The notes below the pieces were generated by a model. That model ran no database searches. It was not told where the DNA came from and worked only from the letters and a program-made list of their open reading frames with translations. The position numbers and the translations under genes were made by a program. DNA of 64,000 nt from Octopus sinensis (taxonomy: Eukaryota): NCBI RefSeq assembly GCF_006345805.1, contig NC_043001.1, forward strand, positions 50,778,001 through 50,842,000. The letters run 5' to 3'. Below, one piece after another: positions 460-59,050 of the stretch; the first letter of the stretch is position 1, and each line of letters starts with the position of its first letter.

Positions 460-1647
460 CGAGGTGGTATCAAAAAGTTCCTGGAATATTTATGTTTAAT
501 TTAAAAAAAACTTATTTACTTAAATTTTAACAGAATTTCCTTCAAAATAGTCACCTTGCGCAGCAATATACCGGTCCCAACGTTCCTGTCACTTTTGGAA
601 TCCGGCCTGGAAGTCGTTTTCCGTAAGAAAGTCGAGGACCTACAATTCACTCTGGATCTCGACAATGGTGTTAAAACGGTGACCTTGAGCTGTATTTTCA
701 TCTTGGAGGAGAGATGGAAGTATACAGGTGCTAAATCTGGAGAATAGTGCAGGTACGGAAGCCCTACTATGTTGATATGGGCGAAAAACTCACGAGTGAG
801 GAGAGCTTGGTGACAGGGTGCACTGTTGTCGAGAAGAATCCAGTTCTTCGCGCTCCACAGATCCAGTCGCATTCGCCGAATGTCCTCCTTCAGGCGCTTC
901 AAAACGTTGCAGTAGAACTCTCGATGAACGGTCTGACCTTGGGTAATGAATTATCGATGCACAATACCACATTTCCGTGGGTGACGCTCGTGGCAGGTCT
1001 TCAAGATCGCTCATCGTCTTCCTGGGACGTTCTTCAGGTCTTGAAGTGCCCATGCAACTTGAAATATTGCGTGCCGAAGAATGCTTAATGTTTCTGTAGC
1101 AGACTTCTCAAGTTTAACGCAAAATCTCGCGTTGGCTCTTTGTTACAACTTCCTGTCCATGACAATATCGCAGACTACAGCATACATCACCGTGATCACC
1201 GTGACCGACCAGGCTATCAGATGTTGCTACACGTCGCTGGTCACAATGCGCTTCGCATCGTTTTAGCCTTTAAATAATGCCACCCCGCTGGCTAAGCGAG
1301 CATGCCAACAGAAGAGTGAGAGAAAGTTGTGGTGAAAGAGTACAGCAGGGGTCGTCACCACCCCACTGCCGGAGCCTCGCGGAGCTTTAGGTGTTTTCGC
1401 TCAATAAACACTCACAACGCCCGGTCTGGGAATCGAAACCGCGAGTCCGCTGCCCTAACCACTGGGCCATTGCACCTCCACAGAGCATACACTTGATCAC
1501 AAAAACACAAATTTTACAACTTGCGAAGTAAACATAGCGATATCACTAGGGCACACTGCCTGATAAAGGTCACTGCTCACGCAACCCTGTGCTGCCATCT
1601 GTTGTTGCGCTACAGAACTAGTCAGGGTGTTTTTTGATACCACCTCG
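460..1647 (-). mobile_element. Mariner (DD34D) transposon, internally deleted, defective
   Basis: 17-bp perfect TIR cgaggtggtatcaaaaa at 460-476 and 1631-1647, flanked by TA (458-459, 1648-1649). Minus-strand transposase remnants: N-terminus from ATG at 1160 (MDRKL..RANARFCVKLEKSATETL) and C-terminal half ...WILLDNSAPCH...YSPDLAP (ORF 516-902). The middle part is missing at a junction near 976. Confidence 0.85.
1281..1481 (-). mobile_element. tRNA-derived SINE 5' portion nested in the mariner
   Basis: Minus strand shows A-box tggcccagtggttaggg and B-box ggtttcgattccc. Homologous to copies at 12815-12980 and 29425-29727. Confidence 0.75.
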
Positions 1648-11990: not shown

Positions 11991-12814
11991 TGTTGCATCT
12001 CGTGTAAATGACAAAGAACTATGATGGTTGATGTTATGTAGAACTTGAAAAGTACCAATCACTTATGCAAGATGGCAAAACATGTTGAAATGCGAGGGAT
12101 GGTGGGACTGAAACATATAATATGTATAATATCTACGTCTGGGCTTTTGCCTCCTTTGAACTTGCTTAGTTTCCATTTACTGCCTCTAATGCCTGTTCTA
12201 TCTCATCTGTCACTTTCCCTTTCTCCTCTTCATTGTTCAATGTCATCTATAAAATGGGGCATATCATTAGATCTATCTATACTCAATTCTCTCACCATCA
12301 TCAGTTGTACCTCTCTCTTATCAGTTAAAATTACTCTCCTTTACTGCTACAGTTCCTCCAGTTCATTTGTTGACATATCATTGTATTATATCATTGACTA
12401 TTCCTATGGCTATCTACCATTTGCTTTCCCTCTCTCTCTATTTCTTTCATTCTCTCTCTTAGTAACTATAAAGCTTCCGTTAGTTTCTCTTCCCCATTAC
12501 CATATTTCTACCATTTCTCCTGCCTTTTTGGTTCACTTCCCTATCATACATGCTCTTGCTCTTCTTTCCCCTGCCTCCCAAATTCATGTTCTACAGTCAT
12601 ACTCTACTATTTATTCTCTTAGTGTTTTTGCCCTGAAAGAACAAAGGTTACATAAGAGTAGTGAGGTTTCTTTTGTCATGCAGGCTGTAAAGCAACTTCA
12701 CTAGTGCAAGTAAAATGAAGTATTACACCTTACACTATGTAATGTGTTAGTTTCTATGGCAAAATTCCTTTCCTGTGTCAGAAACATGTCTTGTGAGTGA
12801 AGTATTGTTCCTTC

Positions 12815-12980
12815 TCAAACCATGCCTGGCTCATAAGGGCTGGTTTCCTGGTTTCATTGGTGTATAGGTTCCTCACCTGGATGGGACGCCAGTCCGTCGC
12901 AGGTGAGCTGCAAGATGCAGGAGGAAAGAGTGAGAGAATGTTGTGGCAAAAGAGTCAGCAGAAGTTCACCATTACCTTCT
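12815..12980 (-). mobile_element. SINE fragment
   Basis: Homologous to 29425-29727 and 1281-1481. Confidence 0.7.
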
Positions 12981-13107: not shown

Positions 13108-13403
13108 TCGAGTGTGATTGTTACCAACGTCGCCTTACTGGCACCTGTGCTGGTGGCATGTGTAAAAGGATTTGAGTGAGGTCATTGCCAGTACCACCTG
13201 ATTGGCCCCTGTGCCGGTGGCACGTAAAAGGCACCCACTACACTCTCGGAGTGGTTGGCGTTAGGAAGGGCATCCAGCTGTAGAAACTCTGCCAAATCAA
13301 GATTGGAGCCTGCTGCAGCCATCTGGTTCGCCAGCCCTCAGTCAGAATCGTCCAACCCATGATAGCATAGAAAGCGGACGTTAAACGATGATGATAATGA
13401 TGA
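13108..13403 (+). mobile_element. SINE/RTE-type 3' tail ending in (GAT)n
   Basis: cactacactctcggagtggttggcgttaggaagggcatccagctgtagaaac...ggacgttaaacgatgatgat. The same tail occurs at 54385-54576 and, inverted, at 39250-39460, 43700-43800, 45486-45720 and 47020-47400. Confidence 0.75.
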
Positions 13404-20360: not shown

Positions 20361-21447
20361 TAGGTTGTCAAGTATAAAATTTGTAGAAAAGACAATAAAG
20401 TTTGCTAATGTTTTATAGATACAAGGAATAGTTTTATTCATCAAAATGTGCACCCATATTGTCAATACACTTTTGCTATTTCAGCAGTAACTTGTCCAGC
20501 CCAGAACTGTAAAAGCTTGACAACCTAGAGTCAATAAAATCTTGGAAGGCCTGTTTTACAGCATCGTTGGAATTAAATTTTTTTCCTATCAAAGTTATCC
20601 AAATTCTGGAAGAAGTGGTAGTTAGTGGGGGCAAAATAAGGTGAGTATGGTGAATGATGGAGAACTTCCAACTCCCACTCCTGTAGTTTTGCCAATGTCA
20701 TTTTTGCAATGTGCTGTCTGGCGTAGTCTTGCAATAAAATAGGAGTGGATCTATTGACTAATCTAGGCTGCTTTTTTTGTGTAAGTTTCTGCATCATTTG
20801 GTCCAGTTGGCTGCAGTATACTTCGGCCGTGATTGATGAGCCAGGTTTAATGAAATCATAATGGATCACACCTGTGCCAGACCACCAAGCACACATCATC
20901 AGCTTCTTTTGATGAATTTTGCTTTTTGGACTGTTTTTTGGTGGCTCGTTTTTGTCCAACCATTGTGCTGAACGTTTATGGTTGTTGTATTAGATCCATT
21001 TCTCATAATTCGATTAAAAGATGATCCATTATTGTGAAGAGAAAGTAGCATAATGCAGGCTTCTAAACATTGCTGTTTCTAATTTTCATTGAGTTCATGT
21101 GGAACCCACTTATCCAACTTTCTCACTTTACTGATTTGATCTAGATGAATCAATATTGTTTGCTTGCTAACACCAAACAACAACGATAATTCATGGGCAC
21201 TTTGAGATGGATCTGACTCGACGGTGACTTTCAGTTCGTCATTATCCACCTTTGTTTCTGGTTGATCACATTGCTCATTTGTGAGGTCAAAGTTACCAGA
21301 ACAAAATTTTGCAAGCCAATTCGATACTGTCTGCTGTGTAATAACATTAGAATGAAATATTCCATTAATATTCCAAGCTGTCTGTAATATTGTATTTCCA
21401 AGAAAGAACTCATATTTCAAAATTGTACGAATTTCCAACTTAGCCAT
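20361..21447 (-). mobile_element. Mariner transposase pseudogene
   Basis: MAKLEIRTILKYEF...WVPHEL (from 21447), then ...CAWW...ILLQDYARQH...YSPYFAPTNYHFF and C-terminal QKCIDNMGAHFDE* (stop 20434-20436). Terminus TA-GGTTGTCAAG at 20361 matches the TIR of the 50111 mariner; the other TIR was not found. Confidence 0.85.
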
Positions 21448-21726
21448 CTCTAAACAAAAATCTGACTTCAGCCTCATTTTACCGGCTGGTAACTTCCTTC
21501 TGCTGGTACTTAATAGCATTGATTGGTTGTGTTTGATCATGCCATCACCAAAGAGTTTGTCTGCACCACTTAAGTTTCCTCTGTGTTGGTTTTTATTCAG
21601 AGTTACTACTCTCATAAATGAGTTGCACTCACTATGGCTTATGGAGGCTAAGTCTACACATCCTCATGCAAGTATTTATTCAGAATTACTATTCTCTTTG
21701 GTTGGCTACTTTCATGATGGTTTGTG

Positions 21727-23800: not shown

Positions 23801-25635
23801 TAAGTATCTGACACCATTAGAAAAAGAATAGTTTACTTTGTTAGAAAATGTTGGGGAAGTTAGGTGCAACTGGTTAGGGATATTCTACTTAGGATACCAA
23901 GACATGGTTATAATTGTGTTGGTTGAGGATCAGGGTCATTTGAATTAGAGCAAGTTTGATCAATTGATAATAACAATATATGTAAAATACACATGTATTT
24001 GCCTGTGTTTGAAGTTCCACTACAAAAAAGGCTGTTGAATCTGTTTAAGTATTTATATATAAGTATAGCTATTATTTTGAATGTGTGTATATGCTATATC
24101 TGTATATTTGTATGTATAGATGATTGTGCATAATGTATCATCATCATCTTAATGTCCACTTGTCCATGCTTGCACAGATCTGATGGACTTCATTGAGGCT
24201 GATTTCCTACAGCTGTATGCCCTTCCTTTCACCAACCCCTAACTTGTTTCTCAAGTTAATATTTCTTAATGGCCAGACATGTCATCAAAGAAGTGTGGAA
24301 ACAAAGGACACTGCTCATATTACTGTGTTAATTGTGGTCTATATTAATATGAATTATACAGTGAAGTTTGTGAATTTGGCTAAGTGTGTATGCTGTAAAG
24401 AGAAGAGGAATCTGAGATTTCAAGGGCAGTCCCTTCATCAGAGAGAGAGAGAGAGAAACTTGGAAATGACTTCATTTTTTTTTTGAGGTTTAATAATAGG
24501 TAGGAATCCCACTTAGGTATTAAATCTCAAAACTTCTTGTTCATCATTTATCTTGAGTTCTTTGTGAAGCTGATAATCAAGTTCATACTTCAGAGGCAAA
24601 CTTAAGGCTGTTGAAAATATAGCTACCATTTATAATTCTGAATGTGGTGGACATTACAATAATATAGTTGATTGTAAGAGACACCAAATCTCAGTTACAT
24701 TGTAAAGATTGTGTATAGTATATAAGATGTAAAGTGTACACTCAAATGATGTAACCAGATTGCAGTGAAACTACATAAAACCAGCTTTCAGTGTGCTATA
24801 TTCATTTGTAGAATGACCAGGCTGTAACTAAATAGTGAAGTTTGTAGAATTCCTAAAATTGTATTCTGTTGCCTAAATAATATAGTTCTGGAAGAAATAG
24901 TAGTGGTAAAGTGTCAAGTAGGCAATTGCTAAATAAATATTTACCTCCCTTAATTACTATAATTTTTTTTTCAATCTTGCCATGTTAGTGAAAGTAGATC
25001 AGTAAGAAGTGACAGTAGCTGTGATGATTTATGATTGCAGTATGGGGTAAATATTGTGCAAAGAAAACAAAAAAACCTCAAGCAATTAATAGTAATGAAT
25101 GCATAAAATAGAAGTTTTCTTTTTCCAATAATATTATTCAGTTGATTCAGTTGTTTGTGGTGCGAGTTCTTGTCTTTTTATCTTATTAACAGTTTTAAGT
25201 AAATAAAATACTGTTCATTATGAATAGACTGTTGGATTGTTTCTTGGAATATATAATATTCAGTTGGAACTATATTGCATTATCCTTCCTTAATTACTTA
25301 ATTTTGTGTTGAGAAGAATATTTCAGAGGTAAATTAACTATTTAACTAACAAACGAGTTATGTATAAAGATAAGTACCTCTTGTCATATTTCACAGTTTT
25401 GAAAGTTGCAATCATATCTCAACCTGTTTTAGCTAGTATATTTGTTTGTAACAATTTTTTTGTTACACTGCTTCATGTTTTAAATAAAAATTGTATTCTT
25501 TTTAGTGTCTCTAAGTTGCATGTTATCTCTAATTTTTGCCTTCTTTTTTAATTGCAGTTTATTTGGTTAACACCTTCAAATATTACTTACCAACTTCAAC
25601 GTGATTATTTTGTAAACAAAACAAAGCAAAAAAAA

Positions 25636-28330
25636 ATGGGGCAATTGACAAAAGAAGAAACTAAGACTGAAACTAGGAAATTACCAGAAGAAAGGACATT
25701 AGAAAGAGACCAGCAGTTTCTTTCTGGTGAGGAGGCTAATCTTAGTGAGGAAGAGGAACAACCTAAAGAATATAAAGCCCAAAACTCATTGACTGTTGGT
25801 TCTGAGTCTGATGTTCTCGAAAGGAATTTTTCAAATCTTACTATATCAGATGGCTCAATGAAATCAGTTGAATTAGCTTCTGCAGGAGAAGAATCAGAAT
25901 CAGATGAGGAAACAGATGACGATTTGGACAAAGGTGAAAGCTTGAAAAGAGGTCCAACTAATGGTGTACCAGTCAGTCTTTTGAGGACTCATGAAGCTTA
26001 TTTTGCCTCTTCCCAAGATCCTGTGTTTACTGAGAATAAATCTAAACGATCATATGATTCTCATGATGTACCATACTATAAATACCAAAGACCTGTTTAC
26101 AAAAGCTGTGAATTGAATGAGTCTTGGCTCAGCAGTAGTTTTCCAGTGACAAATGGAGGAATAATTTCAGTTAATGGTGAAAATTATGAATCTGACAGTG
26201 CTCAAAGTGCACCATATACAATCTCAGAGTGCTCAAGATCTCCTGATCAAAATGATAGTCAGAATGATCTTGCCATTTTAAATCAAGAAAATACATTGGA
26301 TGATTTGATGGCTATTTTACAAGAAGATAACAATAAAAATATGTATCCCAACTTATGTAAGGAGGACTTTAGTTCTTCTAAAATTTCTCATATAAAAAAC
26401 ATTAAAGAAACATTGAAGAATGGCTTTGAAAAATCTACTCCTAACAATATTCCAGAAACTTTTAATATAGAGGATCAATATAATAAGGCTTCACCACCTC
26501 CTCAGTGTGTTCCTCAGCTTCTTGATCAGCATTGTCCCAACTTTGAGATGAATGAGACTCTAAATGTAAATATTACTGAGCAAGAAAATTTAAATCGAAT
26601 GGCTGCCATTTATGAACGAATGCCAGGTCTGAAAAACTGTGGGCCAAGTTCAATGGATAAGAAACTTCAAGAACAATTTTTGCTAAATTCTTTGAAGCAG
26701 AATGATACACTTGATGGATGTAGTATCTTAAATGCTCCTCCATATATGGGCCAGCAGTTTATAGATGGTAACTTACTCAATATCTGCAGCCAAGGGCAAA
26801 TTACAATGAATGAGGGTAACCAAAGCAGACCTGTAACGAATTCTGGTAGTGAAAGGAAACCTGTAATGAATATTGGCCCAGACAAACGTACCACTATAAT
26901 GGGTTCTGACCACCAGTTGCAAGGCTTGCATAATTATGACCAAAAACCGATTATGATAAATGGAAGTGCTGGCCAACAACAACCCATAAATGGTAGTGGC
27001 CAAAGAGTGAACAGAGTTAGTCCTATTTGTCAAGGAGTAACTGAAATGAATGTTGGTAGACCAAATCAAAATGTAATGAATACTCGTAACACAGCTGCGA
27101 CTATGATAAGTGCTGGTAACCAAGGTCGTATTATGATGAATCTTAGTAGTCAGAATCAGGTTATAATGAATGCTGGAATCCAAAGTCAGGCCATAATGAA
27201 TGCTGGAAGCCCAGGTCAGACTATAGCAAATGCTGGGAGCCCAGGTCACTCTATAGCAAATGTGGGGAGTCCAGGTCAGCCCATAATGAATGCTGGCAGC
27301 CCAGGTCAGACCCTAGTGAATGCTGGCAGTCCACATCAGACCATAATGAATGCTGGCAGCCCACATCAGACCATAATGAATGCTGGCAGCCCACATCAGA
27401 CCATAATGAATGCTGGGAGCCCACATCAGACCATAATGAATGCTGGGAGCCCACATCAGACCATAATGAATGCTGGGAGCCCACATCAGACCATAATGAA
27501 TGCTGGGAGCCCAAGCCAGACCATAATAAATGCTGGGAGCCCTGGTCAGACCCTAGTGAATGCTGGGAGCCCAGGTCAGACCATAATGAATGCTGGCAGC
27601 CCAGTGAATGCTGGCAGCCCTGGTCAGACCATAATAAATGCTGGGAGCCCTGGTCAGACCATAGTGAATGCTGGGAGCCCACATCAGAACATAATAAATG
27701 CTGGGAGCCCAAATCAAACCATTCTGAGTGCTGACAGCCCAAGTCAAACTATTTTGAATGATGATGAACAAGAACAGATTATAATGAATGCTACTAGCCA
27801 AGCGCAGACCGTCACTATGCGGCAAACCTGGATGAATTCTCTTGATGGAGGGCAAAATCTGCCTTCAGTTTCGGTACCATGTACGGTAAATCCCAATAAA
27901 TCCCCACTGATTTATTCCCCTGTTGCTGAACTTGTTGGACAAGGCGGTCAAGTTTATTCTTCCCAATCACCACATGTTATAATAAATGGTACCACATCCA
28001 ATTTACAAAATCCTGCTATTGTTACACAAGCAATACCTAACCAAACCACAACCCCAGGAACCTTAACATCAACAGCAGTCTCTTCTACTCCTCTCTTAGT
28101 ATTGAACACCCCACCACTGTATATCATGTCACCTACTTCAAATGCTCTTATCCTTGTTCAAAAGCCACCAACACCAACCACAAAATCTTCACCAAAGCCA
28201 ATTTTACCCAAACCTCCTGCATCAGATATCAAACCACATTTGTCAGATGAACACGTTTTCCCAAAGCATTTCAACACTGCCAAGAAAGGAAAAGCTGTTT
28301 TCAATCCTGATGCTAATGCAGTCAAATCAG
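25636..28330 (+). CDS. Nuclear IkB-like (BCL3/IkB-zeta/IkBNS-type) ankyrin protein, coding exon 1
   Basis: ORF 25552-28353; acceptor ttttttaattgcag before 25558; first ATG at 25636; donor cag|gtttgt at 28331 (phase 1). Acidic N-terminus, decapeptide repeats, Pro/Thr-rich end. Confidence 0.85.
26803..27810 (+). repeat. In-frame 30-bp coding minisatellite, decapeptide (I/L)(M/V/I)NAGSP(H/G)QT
   Basis: 22 clear units at 27163-27810 (two shortened), five identical IMNAGSPHQT, plus 12 degenerate units at 26803-27162 in the same 30-nt register. Confidence 0.95.
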
Positions 28331-28409
28331 GTTTGTTTATGTTATGTTTTTAGATTATTTGTTATTGAAAAATTTTTTTTTTATTAAAAAAAAAGAAAAA
28401 GAATAATTA

Positions 28410-31060
<2,651 letters not shown>

Positions 31061-33244
31061 GTTGACTGTGTCTTTTGTATGAAACATAGTGTTTCAAAGA
31101 CTACATTATCCAGTGTGTTCTTCAGTTTTTAAAACTGGTTGGCTGTTATTTGGGTCTGATTTAGCTGCTATTTCTGCCAGGTCAAGTGACTCTGTAGAAG
31201 TTTCCTTGTTGCTTTAGTGGACTGTAATGTTTTGTTTAGAGGTGTGTCTTTCATATAAAACAAACGACAAATTTTCTTACTATTGTTTAGTCTTGAAATT
31301 CTATCGGACTCCTATTTAAGAAGAGCTAATTAAATATTTTATTGATAAGATTCCACAAATCTGTACTATGGTAATGTCTATGGTTTTCATTTTTCATGTT
31401 GGCATGGATAAATACTTTCAATAGTCAAGATAGTAAAGCATTGAAATGTCTTATAGTTTATTGGCATTGTTCATATTTCTAGCCATCATCACTAATTGCA
31501 CTCATGATTCAGTTTTGTATCCTGTGTTCTCATTGAGGTGCAGCGTTTTTGAATATCAAAAACATTTGTGCTTCATCAAGATTAAGGAAGATAGATACTT
31601 TAGAAAGCAATAGCAATTATATATTTACCAAATCAGTTTCATGTTTGACTGGATATTTGGTAATGCTTATAGAGGTATTTGTTAGGTACTTGTATGTATC
31701 ATTGTTATTGTTAGAGCACTGGATAGTAGCAATTAGTAGCACATTCTTCTAGTGTCAGGAAAATAATGTTAAAGTTGAGCCTTTCAGCTTTACTTCTTCT
31801 CACCAAAACTCAGGAGCTTGTGCCCAAGTTGGAAATTGTTATTGTTTTTGTTCAGATAATTTCTAACATATGTACAAGGTCCAGTATTTGAAAGAATGAG
31901 AGGTGAAGTTAACCTTGGTTGGATCTGAACCCAGAATATAAAGAGTCAGAACATATGCCATAAGACATATTTGTCCAACATTCTAATGATTCTGTTAATA
32001 CCTGCTCTAACTTAACAAAATATACTCAATGCTACATTCTTTTCCAGATGTTTTTTGGTTGGGCAATATTTATCCATTTCTGGGTATTTGATGAAGCTGG
32101 TATAGTTTAAAAAAAAAACAGTTTTGAAATTTATAACTTGGGATAACACCAGCATGTAAAACAATAGTTTAGATAGTGTTTAATATTCATTATAGGAAGC
32201 ATTAAAAAGCTAAGGCTAAGTAAAAATAATAAAGATATGTTAGCTAATATTGTTTTATTCTTCATTGACTTATTTCTACTTAACTTTATAAGCATTCCCT
32301 GCATTATATATGTTAGCATGTACTCAACTACTCAAATTTTTACTTTGACCTAGAAGCCTAGTAATTTTAAATGTAATCTGGTTTCTACTTCTGAATAACA
32401 GACTAGTCACATTCTTATTAGTTGCTGTGTTTGTTGGTATTTCAAGTTCATTTGCATAATATATATTACAGCTATTCTAAATGCTGTGGATTAGTTATAA
32501 CTTTTTAGTGAATTGAGTCCTTCATTTACTGCACTTTATTTAAATCTTCAACATTGGGAGCAAGCTGGCACATAAGCAAATACTTAGTGGCATTTTGTCT
32601 GTCTTTATGTTCTGAATTCAAATTCTGCCTAGGTTGACTTTTATCTCTCGTCCTTTTTGGGTTGATGTAATTGACTTAACCCCTCCCCTAAACTTGCTGG
32701 TTTTGTGCTAATATTTGAAACCAATATTTTTAATGCCCTTGGAGAAGTATGAATGTCATGATTTCTGTCTTCTCATAAGTTAATGCTGATGACTTATTTG
32801 ACTAGATTCATCACACTTAAACTATCACTCAAATTAGAAAGTTCTATCTTCCTTCCATTAGATTTAATACAGACAACCTTTTTTGAGAAGTGGGCCACAT
32901 GAAATATGGCCCATTATTAGATGGGCATCACTACTAAAACAAAATTTGACGCTAATTTTTCATTAGGCATGTCATTCAAAAAGTCCTGCGCACCACAAAT
33001 TGTCCATGACTGGTTTAAATATTCTTTTACAAATATCCCCAGTCATTTGTAAACATACTTTGGATAATATGCTCAATACACTGATTCTTGAGTGCCTTTC
33101 CCTGATTTCCTTTGTGTCCCATTTTTTACTGCAGACTTAGGCCTGTAGAGATTCTCCTAACTTAACATAAAAATAAAATAAATTCCTTATCTAAATATAA
33201 ATTCTTTTGTTTCATCTTTTCCTTTCTGAATTTTGTTTTTCAAG

Positions 33245-33444
33245 GTGCATCTCATCAGATAATAGCTCGCCGCTGTGTTGCTTCCAGGACTGATGAGGAA
33301 CTGCTTGCTATTGATTCTGACGGCAACAACTATCTCCATGCTGCTGTGTGCGTAACTGATGTTAACATGGTTAAAGCTCTTCTTGAGAGAATTAAACGGA
33401 TTAAAAAAATTGAAATAATTAATGACTGCAATTCTTTAAACCAA
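33245..33444 (+). CDS. Nuclear IkB-like ankyrin protein, coding exon 2
   Basis: ttttcaag| acceptor, phase 1 entry, GASHQIIARRCVASRTDEELLAIDSDGNNYLHAAVCVTDVNMVKALLERIKRIKKIEIINDCNSLNQ, donor |gtaagt. DSDGNNYLHAAV is an ankyrin motif. Confidence 0.9.
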
Positions 33445-34183: not shown

Positions 34184-34273
34184 ACACCATTATATTTAGC
34201 TGTATTTTATAATAAGCCAGCTGTTGTGTGTGAACTAGTGCGCAATGGTGCCAATCCAAACATACCTGGAGAG
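34184..34273 (+). CDS. Nuclear IkB-like ankyrin protein, coding exon 3
   Basis: aaaatag| TPLYLAVFYNKPAVVCELVRNGANPNIPGE |gtaagt; phase 0-0; canonical ankyrin repeat. Confidence 0.9.
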
Positions 34274-35234: not shown

Positions 35235-35346
35235 AAACGACGCAGTGCTCTACATTGTGCAGCCACACAGGGGAAAGAGTTCAACCTAACATTGAAACAA
35301 CTCTTTGAATCAAAGAAAATTGATCCAAACATTAAGAACTGTGATG
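35235..35346 (+). CDS. Nuclear IkB-like ankyrin protein, coding exon 4
   Basis: tcag| KRRSALHCAATQGKEFNLTLKQLFESKKIDPNIKNCD-g |gtaagg; phase 0-1. Confidence 0.85.
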
Positions 35347-36611: not shown

Positions 36612-36967
36612 GACTAACACCACTGCTCTGTGCCATAATGGAACATGGAAAAATTGTCTCCAGAAATAATAAAAATGTCATGATTGACAACTGTGTTAAT
36701 GTGTCATTGTTACTGAAGAATGGTGCTGATCCAGAGGTATATGATGGCCGAAATGGTATGACACCCCTGATGCATGCAATTGAACGCAAAGACATTAATT
36801 TAATAGAAGCAATTGTGAAACATGTAGATCCTGCAAAATTTCAGAAAATGCTCTCAGCAAGAACATTTAGCGAAAGAACATGTAGTATGATTGCTGAAGA
36901 ATTACAAAATAAATTTGACCCTAGTGTGTATCGGAAGCTGACCAGTATTTTGTCACTCAACAAATGA
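36612..36967 (+). CDS. Nuclear IkB-like ankyrin protein, terminal coding exon 5
   Basis: tatccag| phase 1; GLTPLLCAIMEHG...LLLKNGADPEVYDGRNGMTPLMHAIE...SLNK*; stop at 36965-36967. Confidence 0.9.
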
Positions 36968-38894
36968 TTCTGCCATTTGGTATGTTTATGAAGAAATCTT
37001 TCTAATTACCATTATTGTTTTATCTTTATTGTTACTCTGTCATCTGCCTCTGGTTGATGGCCATGTGACACCTTATATCATAACTAATTAGAATGACTGA
37101 CATGTGTGCATATTTAAAAATGCATTATGATATCATGATATCACAGTACAGAGACACTTCTTAAAGTCATGGTTTTAATGAAAAATTGATAAGAAAAATT
37201 TTTTTCTAAATGTATTCAGAACTTTGTTTTATTAATGGCTTATAGTTAACTAGTGTAATAATTTACATCACTTTTTAGTTTTAATTTCTACTTGTTTATT
37301 ATGTTTGATTTTCTTAAAACAAATAATGTTTACCTAAACTTGAAATTAGGTAAAATTTTGGTATAAAATATTTATGACTTTTCTTCAATTCTACATCAAT
37401 AATTAAAATACTGATTTCTAAAATAATCTTCATCTTGGTTGTCATTTGGCAACATATGAGAAAGCAACTTCTAAATAAAACTTGTTTTGTGAGAGCTTCA
37501 CTAACCGAAACCTGTAAATCTCAGATAATCTTACGTAAGAATAGTAATTTCAGTGTCAGATAGATTTCTGTTGTAGTTTCAGTCTTCCCTTCAATTCTAA
37601 AGATGTAATATGCTACATTTTTTTACATTGTACTTTCTTTTCTTATTCTTTCAGCATTTTGGCAGAAATTGTTATTGGTGAACCCCTGAGTTGAAGTTTT
37701 CTGTTAAATGCTGTGAATCTGTGAGCAGCTATCAGTCTTCCCTAACAGTTAGCTCAGAAACGACGGCATCTGTTTATATATGTACTTGCTGTATGTGGTG
37801 ATCCCAAATACATATAGAGTACAGACAGATATGGTAAAAGCATGTACAGAATTGAAGCATGTGGTTTGTCTTCATGAATCACTTGTTTGTAAGGAACAAT
37901 TTGTTTCTTTGTAAATAACATTTCTTACTGTAGATTTGAACTGAAGAAATTCTTTTTGTGCTGTATATTAATCTCTTATATGATCTGTGTATATGTTAAT
38001 AATATGTGTGTGTATGTATGTGCATTAAAATAACTTTGTGTGCTTGTATTTCCATATCTACTGTTGGTAATTTGAAAATCATCTTTTAAATAGTTTATAT
38101 TTCTTTGTAGACACTCTGTTTTGATCTCTGCAAAAATGCAGTTTTGTGTGTGAAATATATCAATAGGGCTAAATAGAGTTTTCTTAGATGTTTAGTTTCA
38201 GTTTTAAGAAAACATTCCTTTCTAGATAATTTATTATTCTTATTCTCTTTTTATTATTTTAAACATTTTTTTAATGTTTTCCTAATAAACTACAGTTTAT
38301 CTTAATATTTTTGATGTTGTTTTATTTCACCAAAGCTTTCTTTTTTTAAATAGATGGACTAGTAGTTTAAATGTATCTAAGAGTTAACCGTGAATACTGC
38401 AGCAGAACTCTTTTCATTTATTTAGCAAGTCTATGTAATTTAAACATTACCCTTGCCCTCTAAATTTTTATATTGTTTATAACAGGTTTTGTATTTAGAT
38501 GAAATAAAAAACAAAACAAACAATCTCTGCAATTTTGAGATAGAAATACTTATTTTGATTTGCTCTCATGCTACCTCTTTTTATGGTTTGGGTGCAAGAT
38601 GCATACCAGAAAAAATATGGCTGAAGATGGAGTTCCAACAAGTTGATGTTTTTAAGGAGGAAGGATCTGACCAAGTGGATAGTATAGAACTTCGATGGCA
38701 AGAGTAGGATTGGCTGGTGGCAGTGATATAAATAACTAGCTCTGAGAAGCTGAGAATGTTGTAGTAGTTTTAGAAGAGATGAGGAATCAGCCCACATGTG
38801 GTTTAGAGGCTGGAGTGTGTTTATAAGTGAGTCCTTGCTAATTAGCTGGACAGCTTCCCTTTAGATGTGGTGTTGGATTTCATTTTTTTTTTTT

Positions 38895-38985: not shown

Positions 38986-39774
38986 AGAAGAGTCCCTGAT
39001 GTAGGAGCTGAACTTCATTGTGGCTTTCATTTCACTTTAGTTGAGAGTTAGCAGTTGTTCTGCACTAAAATATCTTCTGGTCCAGAAAAGAAAAACTTGT
39101 CTTTTGGATGTGATTTTTGCTTTGGGAGGATGAGATCTCTAGAAGAGATCAGTTATAAAGCTTAGCATTTCTAGCAACAATTAGGGTTTTAATTGCATGT
39201 ATCTTAACATTAGAGAGGGTGAAGTGGAAGACTTCACTTGATATCATTCATCATCATCATTTAAAGTTTGTTTTCCATGCTGGCATTGGTTGGACAGTTT
39301 GACAGGAGCTGGTGAGGCTGGGGATCGCACCAGGTTCCATTGTTCTGATATTGTTTCTATGGCTGGATGCCCTTCCCAATACCAACCACTTTACTGAGTG
39401 TACTGGATGCTTTTTATGTGGCATCTAGTATGAGTGCTTTTTAATGTGGCACCAGTACCACTTTTTCTTATCCAGTTATGCAAAAATTAAAAGAAGAACA
39501 AAACAATTTGCTAATTTGACAACAGACTTCAGGTCTCTTTTCTTAACTTAATTCCTATTATTTATTGTCATCATCACAAGTCTAATTTTCCCAGCTATTT
39601 GTAGTTATTCCATGACCATATGTCATACTTTTGGCAAAGTTCACTTCAATTCATTCCTTTCTAAAGTTATTGTTCCCAGTATTTTCAACACCCTACAATT
39701 TCTGGCTTTCTGACTTCTACCTTGACCCTTTAGTGTTCAAACTGGTTATATCTGGCCCAAATACTCTGCCTGTT

Positions 39775-45485: not shown

Positions 45486-46126
45486 AATCATCATCATCAT
45501 CATTATCATCGTTTAATGCCTGCTCCCCATGCTGGCTTGGGTTGGACGATTTGACATGGAGCTGGCTTGCAGGGAGCTGTCCAGGCTCCAGCTGTCTGTT
45601 GTGGCATGGTTTCTACAGCTGGATGCACTTCCTTATACCAACCACTTAACAGTGTGCTGGGTGCCTTTTACGTGCCATTGGCATGGGTGCATTTACACAA
45701 CACTGGCCCAGGTGCTTTTTATGTGGCACTGGCCCCTGAAAGGACAAGCCTGTATGTGTGGAAGATAGCGATTTTACTTAGCTTGACATGTCTTGTCAAG
45801 TGCAGCAAATCACCACATCTCCCAGTCCCTGGTCATTTCCTCAGTGAGGCCCAGCATCCTAAGATCCTTTCTCATCACTTCATCTCACGTCTTCCTGTGT
45901 CTACCCTTTCCACAGGTACCCTCCGTAATTAGAGCTAGGTACTTCTTTATGCAGCTGTCCCCATCCATACACATTACATGACCAAACCAGTACAGTCTTC
46001 TCTCTCTTGCGCACAACATATGATTCCTCTTATATACAGTTTTCCTCTTAAATCTTTTACATTGTGTCGTGCATGCACACTGACATTACCCATCCAGCAG
46101 AGCATGCTAGCTTCATTTCTTTCAAG
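45486..46126 (-). mobile_element. RTE LINE 3' end with (GAT)n tail
   Basis: Minus-strand LERNEASMLCWMGNVSVHAR...LRGKLYIRGI (ORF 45974-46168) leading into the shared 3' tail. Confidence 0.8.
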
Positions 46127-46358: not shown

Positions 46359-47851
46359 CAAATGCAAGACATTACCCAACATTAGTTTATAATTTAACTA
46401 CATAGTATATATTTGGTTTTGTTTCAGTCAGTTATTACTGTTATTATTGTTCATGCTGTCTTAGTTATTGTCTTTCTTGTAACTACGGCTAACATGCACT
46501 TTATCATACTATTACATTGAAATGTTTTCTACAATTAATTAATTAAGAGACAAAAACTAAAATAAAGCTGTACAGATGTATTTATTACAACCCCTGTCCC
46601 CTATCATTGCTTCTTTTGTTCTCAGCATTCCTATACAATTTATCATTGTTTACTCTGAGAAGCACTGATATAGAAAATTAAACATGATTTCTATACTAAT
46701 AGATTTTTGCATATCTGGATCTACAAATATCTTTCAAATAGCTTGAAATAAAAGGCACTGAGCCTGAAATAAATAAACAGTATAGTCATAATTGGAACAT
46801 ATTTAATTATAAGTCAGCTTGCCAGGATCTAAACAACAACTTTTCATTACTTCATGATAAAGGATGGGTTAATCTAAAAATGGTTCAGATGAGTGGCAGC
46901 AGGCATTATATGACTTGAGTTAATTTTTTTCAAGGTTTGGTGCTGTTCTTAAGTATATTTGTTTGTCAGAGATGTAAGAGAATCTCGAATTCTTGGATTT
47001 AAAAGTATTTTGAATGTTTTAAATCATCATCATTATCATTTAACATCCGGTTTTCATGCTGGCATTGATTGGACAGATTTGACAGGATTCAATGAGCCAG
47101 AGGACTATTTTAAGCTGCAATGTCTGTTTTTGAATGGTTTCTGTGGCTGGATGCATGTCTGTCACTGAAGGGTGCGCTGGATGGCACTTCCCCCTCACTA
47201 TTTAATGGTTCACCCTCAGATTTACAGTGACACACTTATTTTGAAACTCCACTTTAGTATCAATACAAATAAGTGCCCACCCCAAATATTTTAAAGCACC
47301 CCCAGGTACCAAAGTTTGGCGATGGGCCTGGCTGGATGCCCTTCCCAACCTCATTACATTTCTCATGACACCAGCTCCAGTGAGGTCAGTAAGTAACTTG
47401 CAGCACAAAGAAAAAGACTTCTTGAGTGATTATAATAAAGAGGGAAGTAGCTTTATGTCACATGTTAAGAGTTAAAATATTATAGAGGAACTGGCACCAG
47501 TGTCTTGCTATAGAGGTGATACTTGGTTATGTCACATTAGATAAAGATGGGTGCAAGTAGTTGGGTAGATGGCGGTGATGAGGTATCAGAGTGAACTATC
47601 AAAATATGAGAAGGTAAATATAAGTGAGAATGTGGACAAAAAATTAGTAACGGTAAGTAGATATATTCATTAGAGCATGAGAGGAGAGTGACAGATGGTT
47701 AAAGATGGATGTAGGGGTTAAACAGAGTGAACAGAAGAAGGGTTGAGATTTAGTCAGAGGAGAATGTCAGTATGGAGGTGGGAGGTGAAGCATTATGAGT
47801 GGCAGAGGAAGGTGATAAGTGGCAATACAGGAAGGGAAGTAAGTAGCAGTA

Positions 47852-49170
47852 CTATACAATTTATCATTGTTTACTCTGAGAAGCACTGATATAGAAAATT
47901 AAACATGATTTCTATACTAATAGATTTTTGCATATCTGGATCTACAAATATCTTTCAAATAGCTTGAAATAAAAGGCACTGAGCCTGAAATAAATAAACA
48001 GTATAGTCATAATTGGAACATATTTAATTATAAGTCAGCTTGCCAGGATCTAAACAACAACTTTTCATTACTTCATGATAAAGGATGGGTTAATCTAAAA
48101 ATGGTTCAGATGAGTGGCAGCAGGCATTATATGTTGCATCAGAAGAAGGTTATGGTGACTGTTTGGTGGTCTGCAGCCAGTCTCATCCATTGCAGCTTTT
48201 TGGATCCAGGTGAAACCATTACGGTGGAGAAGTACTGTCAGTAAATGGATGAAATGCATAAGAAACTCTGACAACAACAGCCAGCATTGGTCAATAGAAA
48301 AGGACCAATTCTTCTCCATGACAACGCTCAGCCGCACGTCGCACAACTGACCCTGCAGAAGTTGAACTAATTGGGCTACGAAACTCTGCTTCATTCGCCA
48401 TACTCACCAGACCTCTTGCCTACCAACTACCACTTTTTCAAGCATCTTGACAACTTCTTGTATGAGAAACGCTTAAAAACCAAGATGATGCCAATCATGC
48501 CTTCAACTTCATCACCACCAGAATGTAGGATTTTTATGTTACTGGCAGAAATAAACTTGTTTCGCATTGACAAAAGTCTACTGATTCTGACGGCATTTAT
48601 TTCGATTAATAAAGCTTTGTTTGAGTCAAGAATTTAAAGGTTAAAAACCACAAGAACTTTCTTAGAATCTCGTTTGTTTTCCTGCTAACTAGAACTTTGG
48701 TCTTAGCTAAGATAATTGCAAAGTTTACTAATTCAAGGTTTTGCTGCTACACCTGGAATTTCTTTTCTAATTTTACTACAGATGCAGCTAGAAGAACAAA
48801 ATCATCAGCATATAGTAGTTCCCAAAGACAGTCAGTTTTAAAATTCTCTTCTATAGCCTGGAGGACTATGATGAATAGGAAGGCTCTCAGAACAGATTTC
48901 GCCTATAGTTCATGAAAACTTCTTAACTGTACAACCATGTCTATAGCATGCCTTGCAAAAACATAATCAAGGGCTAAGGCAGCATTGGACAAAGTTAAAA
49001 GAACTAGCCTCCTTATTATCCTGAATACACTCAGTCAAAAAGATTTGTTAGTAAGTTTATTATAAATATCTAAGTCTAGGTGTTAATTTTATTATTTTTT
49101 TAAATTAGAGGCTTCTTTAATCAACTGAGAGAACCAATATTTAGTTTTGGAACATAGATCATAAAGGAGA
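47852..49170. repeat. Three-piece chimeric duplication of neighbouring sequence
   Basis: 47852-48133 = 46631-46912; 48133-48663 = 50800-51331 (one A indel); 48662-49170 = 51702-52210. Confidence 0.9.
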
Positions 49171-49689
49171 TTAGTAAATATGGAGATAATGTGCTGGGGT
49201 TGGTGGTGGGAGAGAGATGTATGGTGATGAATGTTAGCAGTATGTAGTGAGGTGACCCTAGTGAGTGGGGGATAAAGTTAGGCTGAGAGCATTAACAGCA
49301 GATGTGACAAGGTGAGGAGAATGATAGCAAATGAGGGGAGGTGTTAAAGATTAAATATGACAGTTCTAAAATGTATCTCATAGTTGAAGGAAAGATACCT
49401 TGAAGCACAAAGAAGTGTAATCAGTGGAAGATAAAGGGGAAAAGGATAAGAATGAGCGATATATTTCAAAAGGGAATGGTTCCAAAGGAGGTGGAATAAC
49501 TATAGCACAAAAGGGGATGAAATATGTGTATATCTGCTCTCATGTGATCATAGCAACTGAATAGCATCATAGTTAGAAGAGTGGCGATTGGAAGATGAAA
49601 AAATGGCAAACGCTTGAAGGGACAGATTCGGTGTAGGAGCAGGGCCCAGTTAGTGCATAGATGTGTATATACTGCTTTTAGGACTTCTC

Positions 49690-52060: not shown

Positions 52061-52559
52061 CTGAATACACTCAGTCAAAAAGATTTGTTAGTAAGTTTAT
52101 TATAAATATCTAAGTCTAGGTGTTAATTTTATTATTTTTTTAAATTAGAGGCTTCTTTAATCAACTGAGAGAACCAATATTTAGTTTTGGAACATAGATC
52201 ATAAAGGAGAATGAACAATGGAGGCAAATTTGTTAGGATATCTAATCCACTGGTTAAAGGGAAGTAACTCAAAAAATACAACAATCAATCTCGTATACAA
52301 CCGCTCCGTTTTTCTGTCATCATGTTATCTATGAATTTTAAAGTTTATTTTGTGACAGCCTTTTAGGTGAACTTACTATTGTAATATTTACAATAGTATG
52401 TTCACCTAGTAATATATTTTTTAACATTCCTCCATTATTACACCCTACAAAATGTGTTTAAATGCTATCATAAATTTCTCAGTGTAATTTCAAGGAATCA
52501 AGATGGTTATGTGTTATATTATTTTCGACATTTCTATTGTTGAGATGGTACTAAACATA

Positions 52560-54344: not shown

Positions 54345-54384
54345 TGCATATACATACATATATATATATATATATATACATACC

Positions 54385-54745
<361 letters not shown>

Positions 54746-59045: not shown

Positions 59046-59050
<5 letters not shown>
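58388..59050. mobile_element. TIR element (80-bp perfect TIRs) plus a nearby inverted near-identical partial copy
   Basis: 58388-58467 = revcomp 58662-58741; 58435-58662 = revcomp 58823-59050 with one mismatch. Confidence 0.8.

What the first reader, a model, noticed from the sequence alone, without database searches (positions are those of the whole stretch)
26803..27810. About 34-unit decapeptide array with 19 consecutive Ser-Pro motifs and a centre-to-edge age gradient
Five identical IMNAGSPHQT units sit in the centre. They grade into variants and then into 12 strongly diverged upstream units that keep the exact 30-nt register (27163-26803 = 360). This indicates an old, frame-preserving array that is still expanding. 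Regularly spaced S-P sites are substrates of proline-directed kinases (MAPK/CDK/GSK3) and Pin1. The array could therefore act as a multisite phospho-tunable activation or condensate domain on an NF-kB regulator (inference). I do not recognise this repeat from known IkB proteins.
Basis: partly seen in the sequence, partly recalled or inferred. Interest (0 to 1): 0.7.

Follow-up and report, generated by a model that had tools for sequence, protein, structure and literature searches.

The report
Ser-Pro decapeptide array in octopus IκB-like gene
A real, roughly 34-unit in-frame ten-amino-acid repeat sits in the large first coding exon of an uncharacterised octopus ankyrin protein that resembles nuclear IκB proteins. 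It is shared with the paper nautilus Argonauta, its centre still changes copy number between sister species, and it keeps an invariant Gly-Ser-Pro core. What that core does (phosphorylation sites, a structural turn, or nothing specific) is not settled.

Summary
Window 26803-27810 contains 34 slots of 30 nt in the frame of a 2.7-kb coding exon of Octopus sinensis LOC115211934 (100 % match). There are 19 Ser-Pro sites at 10-residue spacing and five identical IMNAGSPHQT units.

The 12 upstream degenerate units are real (lag-30 z = 6.65). They keep register only in net terms, because some slots shift by +3 or -3 nt.

The array is old and labile:
- Argonauta hians carries an orthologous array of 15 SP units with its own homogenised core.
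- Central units cluster by species, while edge units match across species.
- O. vulgaris has one fewer perfect unit.

Ser6 and Pro7 are invariant in all 34 SP-bearing units of the two species, and their codons vary only synonymously. Positions 2, 8, 9 and 10 have turned over.

The protein ends in an ankyrin domain that aligns colinearly with BCL3 and IκBζ, and it lacks the DSGxxS degron. It is therefore probably, not provably, an atypical IκB.

The non-ankyrin half has no detectable relative outside octopods. A spliced RNA contig confirms that the exon is expressed from 42 nt after the array.

The function is inferred only. A multisite proline-directed phospho or binding module is my leading reading. 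A β-turn structural repeat and a tolerated minisatellite remain open. This is a new member of a known kind, of moderate interest.

The parts
25636..28330 (+). First coding exon (898 codons) of Octopus sinensis LOC115211934. It starts at the Met codon, ends at a GT donor, and holds the whole array.
   Evidence: The ORF spans 25552-28353. The spliced translation of the five exons equals P0001 / XP_029636545 exactly.
26803..27162 (+). Twelve strongly diverged 30-nt slots (pattern x-M-N-x-G...) that mostly lack Ser-Pro. Slots 26893-26982 shift locally by +3 and -3 nt.
   Evidence: Lag-30 identity is 0.46 against 0.28. z = 6.65 against codon shuffles.
27163..27192 (+). Transitional unit IMNAGIQSQA with no SP. 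In O. vulgaris it reads IMNAGIPSQA.
   Evidence: 25/30 identity to the consensus
27193..27750 (+). SP-bearing core with 19 units of consensus I-M-N-A-G-S-P-(G/H)-Q-T. Ser and Pro are invariant, and the segment is uncharged (0 K+R, 1 D+E in 186 aa).
27343..27492 (+). Perfect block of five IMNAGSPHQT units (2 with GGC, 3 with GGG). This is the site of the one-unit copy-number difference from O. vulgaris.
27583..27630 (+). Truncated unit IMNAGSP (27583-27603) joined to a nine-codon unit VNAGSPGQT. This marks a 12-nt in-frame deletion that O. vulgaris shares and Argonauta lacks.
27751..27810 (+). Two degenerate 3' edge units (ILNDDEQEQI, IMNATSQAQT). They are acidic and 80 % identical to Argonauta, which makes them the best-conserved part of the array.
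33245..33444 (+). Coding exon 2: the helix preceding the ankyrin domain, ankyrin repeat 1 and the start of repeat 2.
34184..34273 (+). Coding exon 3 (ankyrin repeat 2).
35235..35346 (+). Coding exon 4 (ankyrin repeat 3).
36612..36967 (+). Coding exon 5 (ankyrin repeats 4 to 5/6 and the stop codon). The protein ends with the ankyrin domain.
37658..37930 (+). A 3'UTR exon, seen only in the spliced RNA contig of a related octopus. It implies a 3'UTR intron at about 36984-37657.

Best explanation
Shown: the feature is a coding minisatellite of 30-nt units, one unit per decapeptide. It lies inside the long non-ankyrin half of an octopod-specific protein that resembles atypical IκB proteins. It grows and shrinks by unequal exchange or replication slippage among the near-identical central units. 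Units stranded at the edges stop being homogenised and decay, or become fixed as unique sequence. The same array has existed since before the Octopus-Argonauta split. Within it the pattern hydrophobic-x-Asn-x-Gly-Ser-Pro has been kept while the other positions were replaced lineage by lineage.

Inferred: the array is an uncharged, polar, low-complexity module whose repeated Ser-Pro sites act as a multivalent regulatory surface. The most likely form is multisite phosphorylation by proline-directed kinases, which would add up to about -38 charge. Repeated docking of a partner is a second possibility. Either would tune the activity, assembly or turnover of the ankyrin protein, in the manner of the Ser/Pro-rich activating tail of BCL3, the N-terminal activation region of IκBζ, or the repeat tails of RNA polymerase II and Spt5.

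Confidence is about 0.9 for the anatomy and evolution and about 0.35 for the phospho or binding mechanism. The figure given is a blend of the two.
For: Anatomy.

Gene model and identity.

Age and conservation:
- Argonauta carries an orthologous array of 15 SP units at 10-residue spacing, with its own homogenised 30-nt core (9.4 copies, 88 %).
- Ser6 and Pro7 are 34/34 invariant. Codon variation at each is 15 synonymous and 0 non-synonymous; Pro uses all four codons.
- Gly5 is 32/34, Asn3 is 29/34 and Ile1 is 27/34.
- Positions 2, 8, 9 and 10 have entropy 1.5-2.5 bits.

Turnover:
- Central units have their nearest neighbour within the same species (28-30/30, against 19-23/30 between species).
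- Argonauta edge units are closer to Octopus units than to their own species' units.
- O. vulgaris has one fewer perfect unit.

Expression: the spliced RNA contig L002 joins 27852-28332 to all four ankyrin exons at the predicted junctions.

Composition: the core has 0 K+R and 1 D+E in 186 residues.

Gene context:
- The ankyrin domain aligns colinearly with BCL3 1K1A (E = 4e-25 with a profile) and with IκBζ 9BOR (E = 1e-20, full length of the domain).
- It is 31 % identical to fish BCL3 from the DxDGD..LH start of repeat 1.
- The protein ends with its last ankyrin repeat, a trait reported as unique to IκBζ among IκBs (PMC11293385).
- BCL3 has a Ser/Pro-rich transactivating tail and is regulated by GSK3 phosphorylation, and IκBζ has an activation domain N-terminal to its ankyrin repeats (PMC3639191).
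Against: - No phosphorylation data exist for this protein.
- The regular SP spacing follows automatically from tandem duplication.
- The 34 units are not independent, because of concerted evolution. They were also selected as 'SP-bearing', so edge units that lost SP are excluded. The invariance is suggestive rather than a clean dN/dS test.
- Comparing the two consensus units alone is not significant: 0 of 6 non-degenerate GSP sites changed, against 5 of 14 elsewhere.
- Extended kinase consensus motifs are not conserved. S-P-x-K/R occurs only in Argonauta, and P-x-S-P occurs nowhere.
- Conservation extends beyond S-P to I, N and G, which a minimal proline-directed site does not need.
- The older upstream units keep M-N-x-G but not S-P.
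- IκB membership is not proven, because generic ankyrin proteins outscore IκBs.
Confidence: 0.45

Rival explanations
1. Structural repeat. Each decapeptide forms a short β-strand (x-Q-T-I-M-N-A) followed by a tight G-S-P turn. The array then folds or self-assembles into a β-serpentine or solenoid, possibly an amyloid-like assembly, with Ile and Asn ladders. On this reading G-S-P is conserved as a turn, not as a kinase site.
For: - Single-sequence AF2 gives a 7-residue strand plus a 3-residue turn for every unit. pLDDT reaches 70-78 over the perfect core.
- The full-length run again shows periodic strands over residues 509-698.
- The top Foldseek hits are β-helix proteins, though they are not significant.
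- Conserved positions tend to alternate (1, 3, 5, 7, 9 against 2, 4, 8, 10), as on one face of a strand.
- Asn, Gly, Ser and Pro are classic turn formers.
- The core is uncharged and lies on the compact side of the charge-hydropathy boundary.
- Amyloid-type motifs do act in NF-κB-type signalling in insects (PMC9496462, PMC13506858).
Against: - Only 1 of the 5 single-sequence models reached mean pLDDT 51; the others reached 37-39.
- In the full-length model the array reaches only about pLDDT 50-54.
- From my own knowledge, AF2 tends to invent solenoids for perfect repeats.
- No Foldseek match has E < 0.7.
- The odd/even alternation has permutation P = 0.07.
- There is no RHIM core motif.
- A Pro in every 10 residues, plus a tolerated 4-residue deletion and variable unit number, argue against a precise fold.
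Confidence: 0.2
2. Tolerated minisatellite. The array is a slippage-prone low-complexity spacer with no sequence-specific role. G-S-P looks conserved only because one founder unit was amplified and homogenised in each lineage.
For: - Copy number differs between sister species.
- Unit number differs between Octopus and Argonauta (19 against 15 SP units), and the upstream degenerate part differs by about 5 units.
- The N-terminal half evolves fast: 43 % identity, against 78 % in the ankyrin domain.
- Unrelated proteins carry similar decapeptide arrays, for example the SYSAITSPGQ mucin-like protein P0127.
- The consensus-to-consensus comparison is not statistically significant.
Against: - The reading frame has been kept open across about 1 kb in three assemblies, and all indels are multiples of 3.
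- Third-codon positions of G, S and P have turned over within and between species with no replacement of S or P. With at least 1 Ser and at least 3 Pro synonymous events and no replacement, the simple neutral expectation is about (1/9)(1/3)^3 = 0.004 (inference).
- Edge units of Argonauta that escaped homogenisation still carry S-P.
Confidence: 0.25
3. The host protein is not an NF-κB regulator. It is an ankyrin-repeat protein with another partner, as seen for nematode IκB-like proteins that bind chromatin factors rather than Rel proteins. Whatever the array does is then unrelated to NF-κB. This rival concerns the gene context and can hold together with any of the readings above.
For: - Generic ankyrin proteins (ankyrin-1, NOMPC, TRPA1, DARPins) score higher than IκBs.
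- Only 5-6 repeats are recognisable, against 6-7 in IκBs.
- There is no DSGxxS degron.
- The closest named non-cephalopod relatives are filarial proteins (34 % identity, with a shared insertion in repeat 4).
- C. elegans IκB homologues did not bind p50 or p65 (PMC7527347).
Against: - Among natural single-domain chains, BCL3 and IκBζ give the best colinear matches.
- The IκBζ-like architecture is present: a long N-terminal region and a protein that ends with the ankyrin domain.
- Automatic annotation of the O. vulgaris orthologue chose BCL3 / p105-like names.
Confidence: 0.3

Closest known systems
IκBζ (NFKBIZ) and BCL3, the atypical nuclear IκB proteins
   Same: - The C-terminal ankyrin domain aligns colinearly with both.
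- The protein ends with the last ankyrin repeat, as IκBζ does.
- A long non-ankyrin N-terminal region sits where IκBζ carries its activation domain.
- BCL3 has a Ser/Pro-rich activating, phospho-regulated tail.
- There is no IKK degron.
   Different: - Neither IκBζ nor BCL3 has a tandem decapeptide array.
- The N-terminal half shows no sequence similarity to either, or to anything outside octopods.
- Only 5-6 ankyrin repeats are recognisable.
- Binding to Rel proteins is untested.
Repeat tails phosphorylated by proline-directed kinases: the RNA polymerase II CTD heptad YSPTSPS and the fission-yeast Spt5 nonapeptide TPAWNSGSK
   Same: Both are tandem arrays of short units (7-10 residues) with an invariant Ser/Thr-Pro in a transcription-related protein. 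Unit number varies between lineages, and degenerate units sit at the array ends. The Spt5 unit is cited from PMC4274631; the CTD comparison rests on my own knowledge.
   Different: There is no homology. The unit sequence differs. The location is internal rather than a C-terminal tail. Phosphorylation and reader proteins are not demonstrated here.
Filarial nematode IκB-like proteins (P0011, P0017; the source names P0017 'NF-kappa-B subunit')
   Same: The architecture is the same: a long N-terminal region and an ankyrin domain at the C-terminus. Identity over about 200 aa is 34 %, with a shared insertion (HG...DN) in the fourth repeat.
   Different: Their N-terminal region has no decapeptide array. 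Orthology is not established.
Pfam PF25296 'Decapeptide repeat region'
   Same: It has 10-residue periodicity, and there is a weak hit over residues 549-632.
   Different: The score is 15.8-16.7 bits against a cut-off of 45. No single stretch passes, and the Argonauta array gives no hit. The array is not a member.
Other decapeptide arrays found by the profile search (P0127 mucin-like SYSAITSPGQ, P0128 KLEEAGSVAQ, P0130 SLEATGAPVQ)
   Same: They share the period of 10 and a small-residue/Pro composition. P0127 shares S-P-G-Q.
   Different: The matches are confined to the repeat, with no shared flanks. P0127 has a signal-peptide-like start and is Ser/Thr-rich like a mucin. This is convergent low complexity, not homology.

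Membership tests
IκB family (atypical/nuclear branch: BCL3, IκBζ, IκBNS) | An ankyrin-repeat domain of 6-7 repeats that is colinear with IκB ankyrin domains. | tested here: inconclusive
   Pfam Ank, Ank_2 and related models are significant. The domain aligns colinearly with BCL3 1K1A (query 22-209 to chain 5-172) and IκBζ 9BOR (11-238 to 26-258). Only 5-6 repeats are recognisable by eye. The AF2 model of the domain was too poor to count repeats.
IκB family (atypical/nuclear branch: BCL3, IκBζ, IκBNS) | Closer to IκB proteins than to other ankyrin proteins (reciprocal or phylogenetic placement). | tested here: inconclusive
   Long generic ankyrin proteins score higher. Among natural single-domain chains, BCL3 (91.8 bits) and IκBζ (77.2 bits) are best. 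In the large protein database the top non-octopod hits are generic or unnamed, with filarial 'NF-kappa-B subunit' and fish BCL3 among them. No phylogeny was built.
IκB family (atypical/nuclear branch: BCL3, IκBζ, IκBNS) | Binds Rel-homology (NF-κB) dimers. | not testable with these tools
   This needs pull-down or co-IP with octopus Rel/p50-like proteins.
IκB family (atypical/nuclear branch: BCL3, IκBζ, IκBNS) | IκBζ-type architecture: a long N-terminal regulatory region and a polypeptide that ends with the last ankyrin repeat. | tested here: met
   The gene model puts the ankyrin domain at residues about 915-1150 of 1150. The trait is described for IκBζ in PMC11293385.
Classical IκB (IκBα/β/ε, Cactus) | An N-terminal DSGxxS IKK/β-TrCP degron. 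| tested here: not met
   No DSG..S or D[ST]G..[ST] motif occurs in the Octopus or Argonauta protein.
CTD-like proline-directed phospho-repeat arrays (works-like comparison, not homology) | A tandem short unit with an invariant Ser/Thr-Pro that is conserved across species. | tested here: met
   All 34 units in two species keep S-P, and their codons vary only synonymously.
CTD-like proline-directed phospho-repeat arrays (works-like comparison, not homology) | The serines are phosphorylated in vivo and read by partner proteins. | not testable with these tools
Pfam PF25296 Decapeptide repeat region | Score at or above the gathering threshold of 45 bits. | tested here: not met
   The score is 16.7 and 15.8 bits with 0 passing stretches, and the Argonauta protein gives no hit.
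RHIM/cRHIM-type amyloid signalling motifs | A core tetrad (I/V)-Q-(I/V/L/C)-G within a β-forming segment. | tested here: not met
   No such tetrad occurs in either orthologue. The predicted β-periodicity has low confidence.

The most novel reading that the evidence does not exclude
The array is a repeat-number-tunable switch specific to octopods. It would be an uncharged, β-prone low-complexity domain on a nuclear IκB-like co-regulator. Its self-association, as a condensate or an ordered β-assembly, would be turned off or on by proline-directed phosphorylation of up to 19 evenly spaced serines. Gains or losses of units in the perfect core would then shift the threshold of an immune or neural transcriptional response between species or individuals.
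Probability: 0.1. Interest if true: 0.7.

Novelty: new member of a known kind. Interest (0 to 1): 0.35.

Why it matters
Cephalopod innate-immune and transcriptional regulators are almost unstudied, and this gene is annotated only as 'uncharacterized'.

The locus is a compact natural experiment. The same coding repeat can be followed over a deep split (Octopus-Argonauta) and a very shallow one (O. sinensis-O. vulgaris). This shows which residues survive concerted evolution (I-x-N-x-G-S-P) and where copy number changes (the perfect core).

If the array proves to be phosphorylated or self-assembling, it would be a lineage-specific way of tuning an IκB-like co-regulator, and a simple length marker for population work. 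If it does not, it remains a clean textbook example of a coding minisatellite with a young centre and old edges.

Tried and rejected
1. Pfam 'Decapeptide' family: the hit is far below threshold and absent in Argonauta. Rejected.

2. Profile search of 1.84 billion representatives with the non-ankyrin half: apart from the octopod proteins, every hit matched only the repeat columns. Inspected examples are unrelated arrays (KLEEAGSVAQ, SLEATGAPVQ, mucin-like SYSAITSPGQ, and others). They are rejected as homologues. No squid, cuttlefish or other mollusc orthologue of the N-terminal half was found.

3. Third word-index protein search (residues 1-560): it returned nothing, not even the self-match. 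It is therefore uninformative rather than negative.

4. O. vulgaris DNA could not be fetched, because P0004 is not on record. The one-unit difference is therefore known only at protein level.

5. AF2 of the full-length protein with a 4-sequence alignment: mean pLDDT 32.6, and even the ankyrin domain is poor.

6. Foldseek of the array model against PDB: nothing with E < 0.7.

7. Motif ideas checked by eye or regex and dropped:
- TRAF-type P-x-Q-x-T: the spacing is wrong (P-x-Q-T) and the motif is absent from the Argonauta core.
- N-glycosylation sequon: absent.
- MAPK-type P-x-S-P: 0 sites.
- GSK3-type S-x-x-x-S: 1 site in Octopus and 3 in Argonauta, so no regular priming ladder.
- DSGxxS degron and RHIM tetrad: both absent.

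8. Period-2 alternation of conservation as evidence for a β-strand: P = 0.07, too weak.

9. The antisense ORFs across the array (26773-27249 and 27251-27742, minus strand) are mirror ORFs of a stop-free repeat, not genes.

10. Literature: no paper mentions LOC115211934, and searches on octopus or mollusc IκB/BCL3 gave nothing on this protein.
Full report
WHAT IS THERE

The window is eukaryotic and AT-rich, with microsatellites and transposon remnants. A 934-codon open frame runs from 25552 to 28353 on the plus strand. Its translation from the Met at 25636 is 100 % identical to Octopus sinensis XP_029636545, 'uncharacterized protein LOC115211934', 1150 aa.

Splicing five GT-AG exons reproduces that protein exactly: 25636-28330, 33245-33444, 34184-34273, 35235-35346 and 36612-36967. 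The array occupies protein residues 390-725, inside exon 1.

CHECKING THE OBSERVATION

Tandem Repeats Finder reports a 30-nt array at 27163-27604 (14.7 copies, 88 % matches) that extends to 27760. The consensus unit occurs 11 times with at most 3 mismatches, against 0 expected, and nowhere else in the window.

There are 19 Ser-Pro motifs at residues 525-701. They are spaced by 10 residues except for one step of 6.

Five identical IMNAGSPHQT units lie at 27343-27492. Two use GGC and three use GGG for Gly.

The twelve upstream slots (26803-27162) are true degenerate units:
- Lag-30 nucleotide identity is 0.46, with lags 60 and 90 also peaking, against 0.28 +/- 0.03 at other in-frame lags.
- z = 6.65 against codon shuffles, and protein lag-10 gives p = 6e-4.
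- The 'exact register' holds only in net terms. The slots at 26893 and 26953 fit best at +3 and -3 nt, and the slot at 26923 is nearly unrecognisable.

Identity to the consensus rises from 9-20/30 upstream to 23-29/30 in the core, then falls to 17-24/30 at the 3' edge. The centre-to-edge gradient is therefore real and asymmetric. Counting the truncated and nine-codon units, there are 34 units.

EVIDENCE FROM OTHER SPECIES

Only two 90 % protein clusters match the exon: the O. sinensis/O. vulgaris cluster and an Argonauta hians orthologue (1015 aa, 41-48 % identity).

Octopus vulgaris. Its isoforms carry the same array, including the 12-nt deletion, with three differences:
- four rather than five IMNAGSPHQT units;
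- Gln to Pro in the transitional unit (IMNAGIQSQA becomes IMNAGIPSQA);
- Arg to Cys in an upstream unit.

Copy number has therefore changed in the perfect core since these sister species split, or it is polymorphic. The direction of the change cannot be told.

Argonauta hians. This species has 15 Ser-Pro units at strict 10-residue spacing. Its own homogenised core is I-T-N-V-G-S-P-G-(K/R)-V (9.4 copies, 88 %). The same unique 3' flank, LN(D/E)DEQEQII.NATSQ.QT, follows the array. The array thus predates the Octopus-Argonauta split.

Age gradient. Central units in each species have their nearest neighbour within the same species (28-30/30, against 19-23/30 between species). Several Argonauta edge units (IVNVGSPKQT, IIDGGSPYQS, IANTGSPFQA) are closer to Octopus units than to their neighbours. 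That is the signature of concerted evolution with a young centre and old edges. It also suggests an ancestral unit close to I-x-N-x-G-S-P-x-Q-T.

Segment identities between Octopus and Argonauta:

| Segment | Identity |
|---|---|
| N-terminal region | 43 % |
| Degenerate upstream units | 31 % (many gaps) |
| SP core | 56 % |
| Two 3' edge units | 80 % |
| Linker | 56 % |
| Ankyrin domain | 78 % |

ARE THE SER-PRO POSITIONS SPECIAL?

Across the 19 + 15 SP-bearing units:
- Ser6 and Pro7 are invariant. Ser uses AGC 19 times and AGT 15 times. Pro uses CCA 19, CCT 10, CCG 4 and CCC 1. Variation is thus only synonymous.
- Gly5 is 32/34 (18 synonymous, 2 non-synonymous).
- Asn3 is 29/34 and Ile1 is 27/34.
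- Positions 2, 8, 9 and 10 have 1.5-2.5 bits of entropy and differ between the two species' consensus units.

It is not met.

Three caveats apply:
- The units are not independent.
- They were chosen as SP-bearing.
- The comparison of the two consensus units alone is not significant.

A minimal-event argument needs at least 1 Ser and at least 3 Pro synonymous events with no replacement. It gives roughly 0.004 under simple neutrality. That figure is my inference, not a tool result.

The older upstream units keep M-N-x-G better than S-P. Position 7 in those units is often Gln. The O. sinensis/O. vulgaris Q/P difference in the transitional unit shows that a single CAA-to-CCA change links the two states.

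IS THE EXON EXPRESSED?

L002 is a 1549-nt Logan contig from run SRR16213285. It is 96-98 % identical at the nucleotide level, so it comes from a related octopus. It aligns to the window in six blocks whose ends coincide with the exon junctions. The blocks start at 27852, 42 nt after the array, and include an extra 3'UTR intron at about 36984-37657.

L002 is therefore a spliced mRNA. Its 5' end breaks just beside the repeat, as short-read assemblies do. However, it lies in the same exon, and all four O. vulgaris isoforms contain it.

WHAT IS THE HOST PROTEIN?

Pfam finds only ankyrin repeats, in the last 250 residues.

Against PDB, long generic ankyrin proteins score highest. The best natural single-domain, colinear matches are BCL3 (1K1A, 91.8 bits with a profile) and IκBζ (9BOR, 77.2 bits, covering the whole domain). 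NF-κB p100 and IκBα follow.

The alignment to a fish BCL3 starts at the canonical D-x-D-G-D..L-H of repeat 1, with 31 % identity. Filarial 'NF-kappa-B subunit'/IκB-like proteins are 34 % identical and share an insertion in repeat 4.

The protein ends with its last repeat. PMC11293385 describes this trait as unique to IκβIκBζ among IκBs. There is no DSGxxS degron. O. vulgaris isoforms were automatically named 'B-cell lymphoma 3' and 'p105 subunit-like'.

I regard an atypical IκB-like identity as probable (about 0.7) but not demonstrated. C. elegans IκB homologues, for example, do not bind p50 or p65 (PMC7527347).

The non-ankyrin half has no detectable relative outside octopods. A profile search over 1.84 billion representatives matched only the octopod proteins outside the repeat columns. 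Every other hit matched only the repeat columns, and the examples I inspected are unrelated decapeptide arrays.

HOW IT MOST LIKELY WORKS

Shown: the array is a frame-preserving minisatellite. It turns over in its centre by unequal exchange or slippage and freezes at its edges, with purifying constraint on hydrophobic-x-N-x-G-S-P.

Inferred: the SP core is strikingly uncharged (0 Lys+Arg and 1 Asp+Glu in 186 residues) and polar. Phosphorylating up to 19 serines would change its charge and behaviour drastically.

Ser/Pro-rich, phospho-regulated activating regions are known in BCL3, and an activation domain lies N-terminal to the ankyrin repeats in IκBζ (PMC3639191). Tandem S/T-P repeat tails read by partner proteins are known in the Pol II CTD and in Spt5 (PMC4274631).

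I therefore favour a multivalent phospho or binding module that tunes an IκB-like co-regulator.

Points against this reading:
- Extended kinase motifs are not conserved. S-P-x-K/R occurs in 7 of 15 Argonauta units and in 0 of 19 Octopus units, and P-x-S-P occurs nowhere.
- Conservation reaches beyond S-P.

RIVALS

(a) A β-turn structural repeat. Single-sequence AF2 draws a 7-residue strand plus a G-S-P turn per unit, with pLDDT up to 78 in the perfect core. Only one of the five models does so. The full-length run is unusable at pLDDT 32.6. Foldseek finds nothing significant. The odd/even conservation pattern has P = 0.07. No RHIM motif exists.

(b) A tolerated minisatellite with no sequence-specific role. 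The long-maintained frame and the purely synonymous variation at S-P argue against this.

(c) The host is not an NF-κB regulator. This is independent of (a) and (b).

VERDICT

The evolutionary reading is supported, except for 'expanding'. The functional reading is plausible but untested.

This is a new, unannotated member of a known kind: a coding tandem repeat with conserved Ser-Pro in a regulatory protein. It is of moderate interest.

Noticed in passing
window 20573-21615 (minus strand): A Mos1/mariner-type transposase remnant split into two ORFs (Transposase_1 DDE part, E = 3.8e-22; HTH_48, E = 4e-9). It lies about 4 kb upstream of the gene's start codon. A similar DDE-like fragment may lie at 516-902 (minus strand), but it has no Pfam hit.
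   Followed up: partly
window 27751-27810; L001 4747-4812: The two degenerate 3' edge units form an acidic/hydrophobic patch, (I/L)LN(D/E)DEQEQII(M/R)NATSQ. At 80 % identity to Argonauta it is the best-conserved stretch of the whole array region. It looks like a small acidic activation-type motif and may matter more than the repeats.
   Followed up: partly
window 28150-28250 (protein residues about 826-866): The linker block PP.Y.MSPTSNALILVQ.PP..TKS.PKPILPKPPASD is almost invariant between Octopus, Argonauta and the RNA contig species. It is a conserved Pro-rich element of unknown role between the array and the ankyrin domain.
   Followed up: no
window 36984-37657 and 37658-37930: The spliced RNA contig L002 shows an additional intron inside the 3'UTR and a downstream 3'UTR exon. 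The coding gene model does not reveal these.
   Followed up: partly
window 28331-33244 (intron 1), especially 29934-31004 and 30300-30550: The intron contains long AAT/TAT/ATT triplet microsatellites and a cluster of 200-400-bp internal repeats at 77-85 % identity.
   Followed up: no
window 46624-52210: Near-identical (99-100 %) duplicated blocks lie at 46624-46912/47845-48133, 48133-48663/50800-51331 and 48662-49170/51702-52210. They indicate a very recent segmental or tandem duplication, or the long terminal repeats of an element.
   Followed up: no
window 53075-53913 and 58435-59050: Two inverted-repeat pairs are present: 310 bp at 97 % and 228 bp at 99.6 %, with short spacers. They are foldback or MITE-like structures.
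   Followed up: no
window 12805-12980, 13208-13403, 29428-29603, 39243-39416, 45494-45677, 54383-54576: Dispersed copies of about 170-200 bp at 75-87 % identity, on both strands, look like a SINE-type family.
   Followed up: no
window 26773-27249 and 27251-27742 (minus strand): Long antisense ORFs (158 and 163 aa) run across the array. They are mirror ORFs that arise because the repeat lacks stop codons on the opposite strand. There is no evidence that they are genes.
   Followed up: yes
window 25552-25635; O. vulgaris isoform P0005: The open frame continues upstream of the annotated Met. One O. vulgaris isoform (1201 aa) reads through it from an upstream exon, which suggests an alternative longer N-terminus. 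Another isoform (P0003, 895 aa) reads through the exon-1 donor into the intron.
   Followed up: no
(tool behaviour): A word-index protein search with residues 1-560 returned no hit at all, not even the identical database protein that one search found. Negative results from that call should not be trusted.
   Followed up: no
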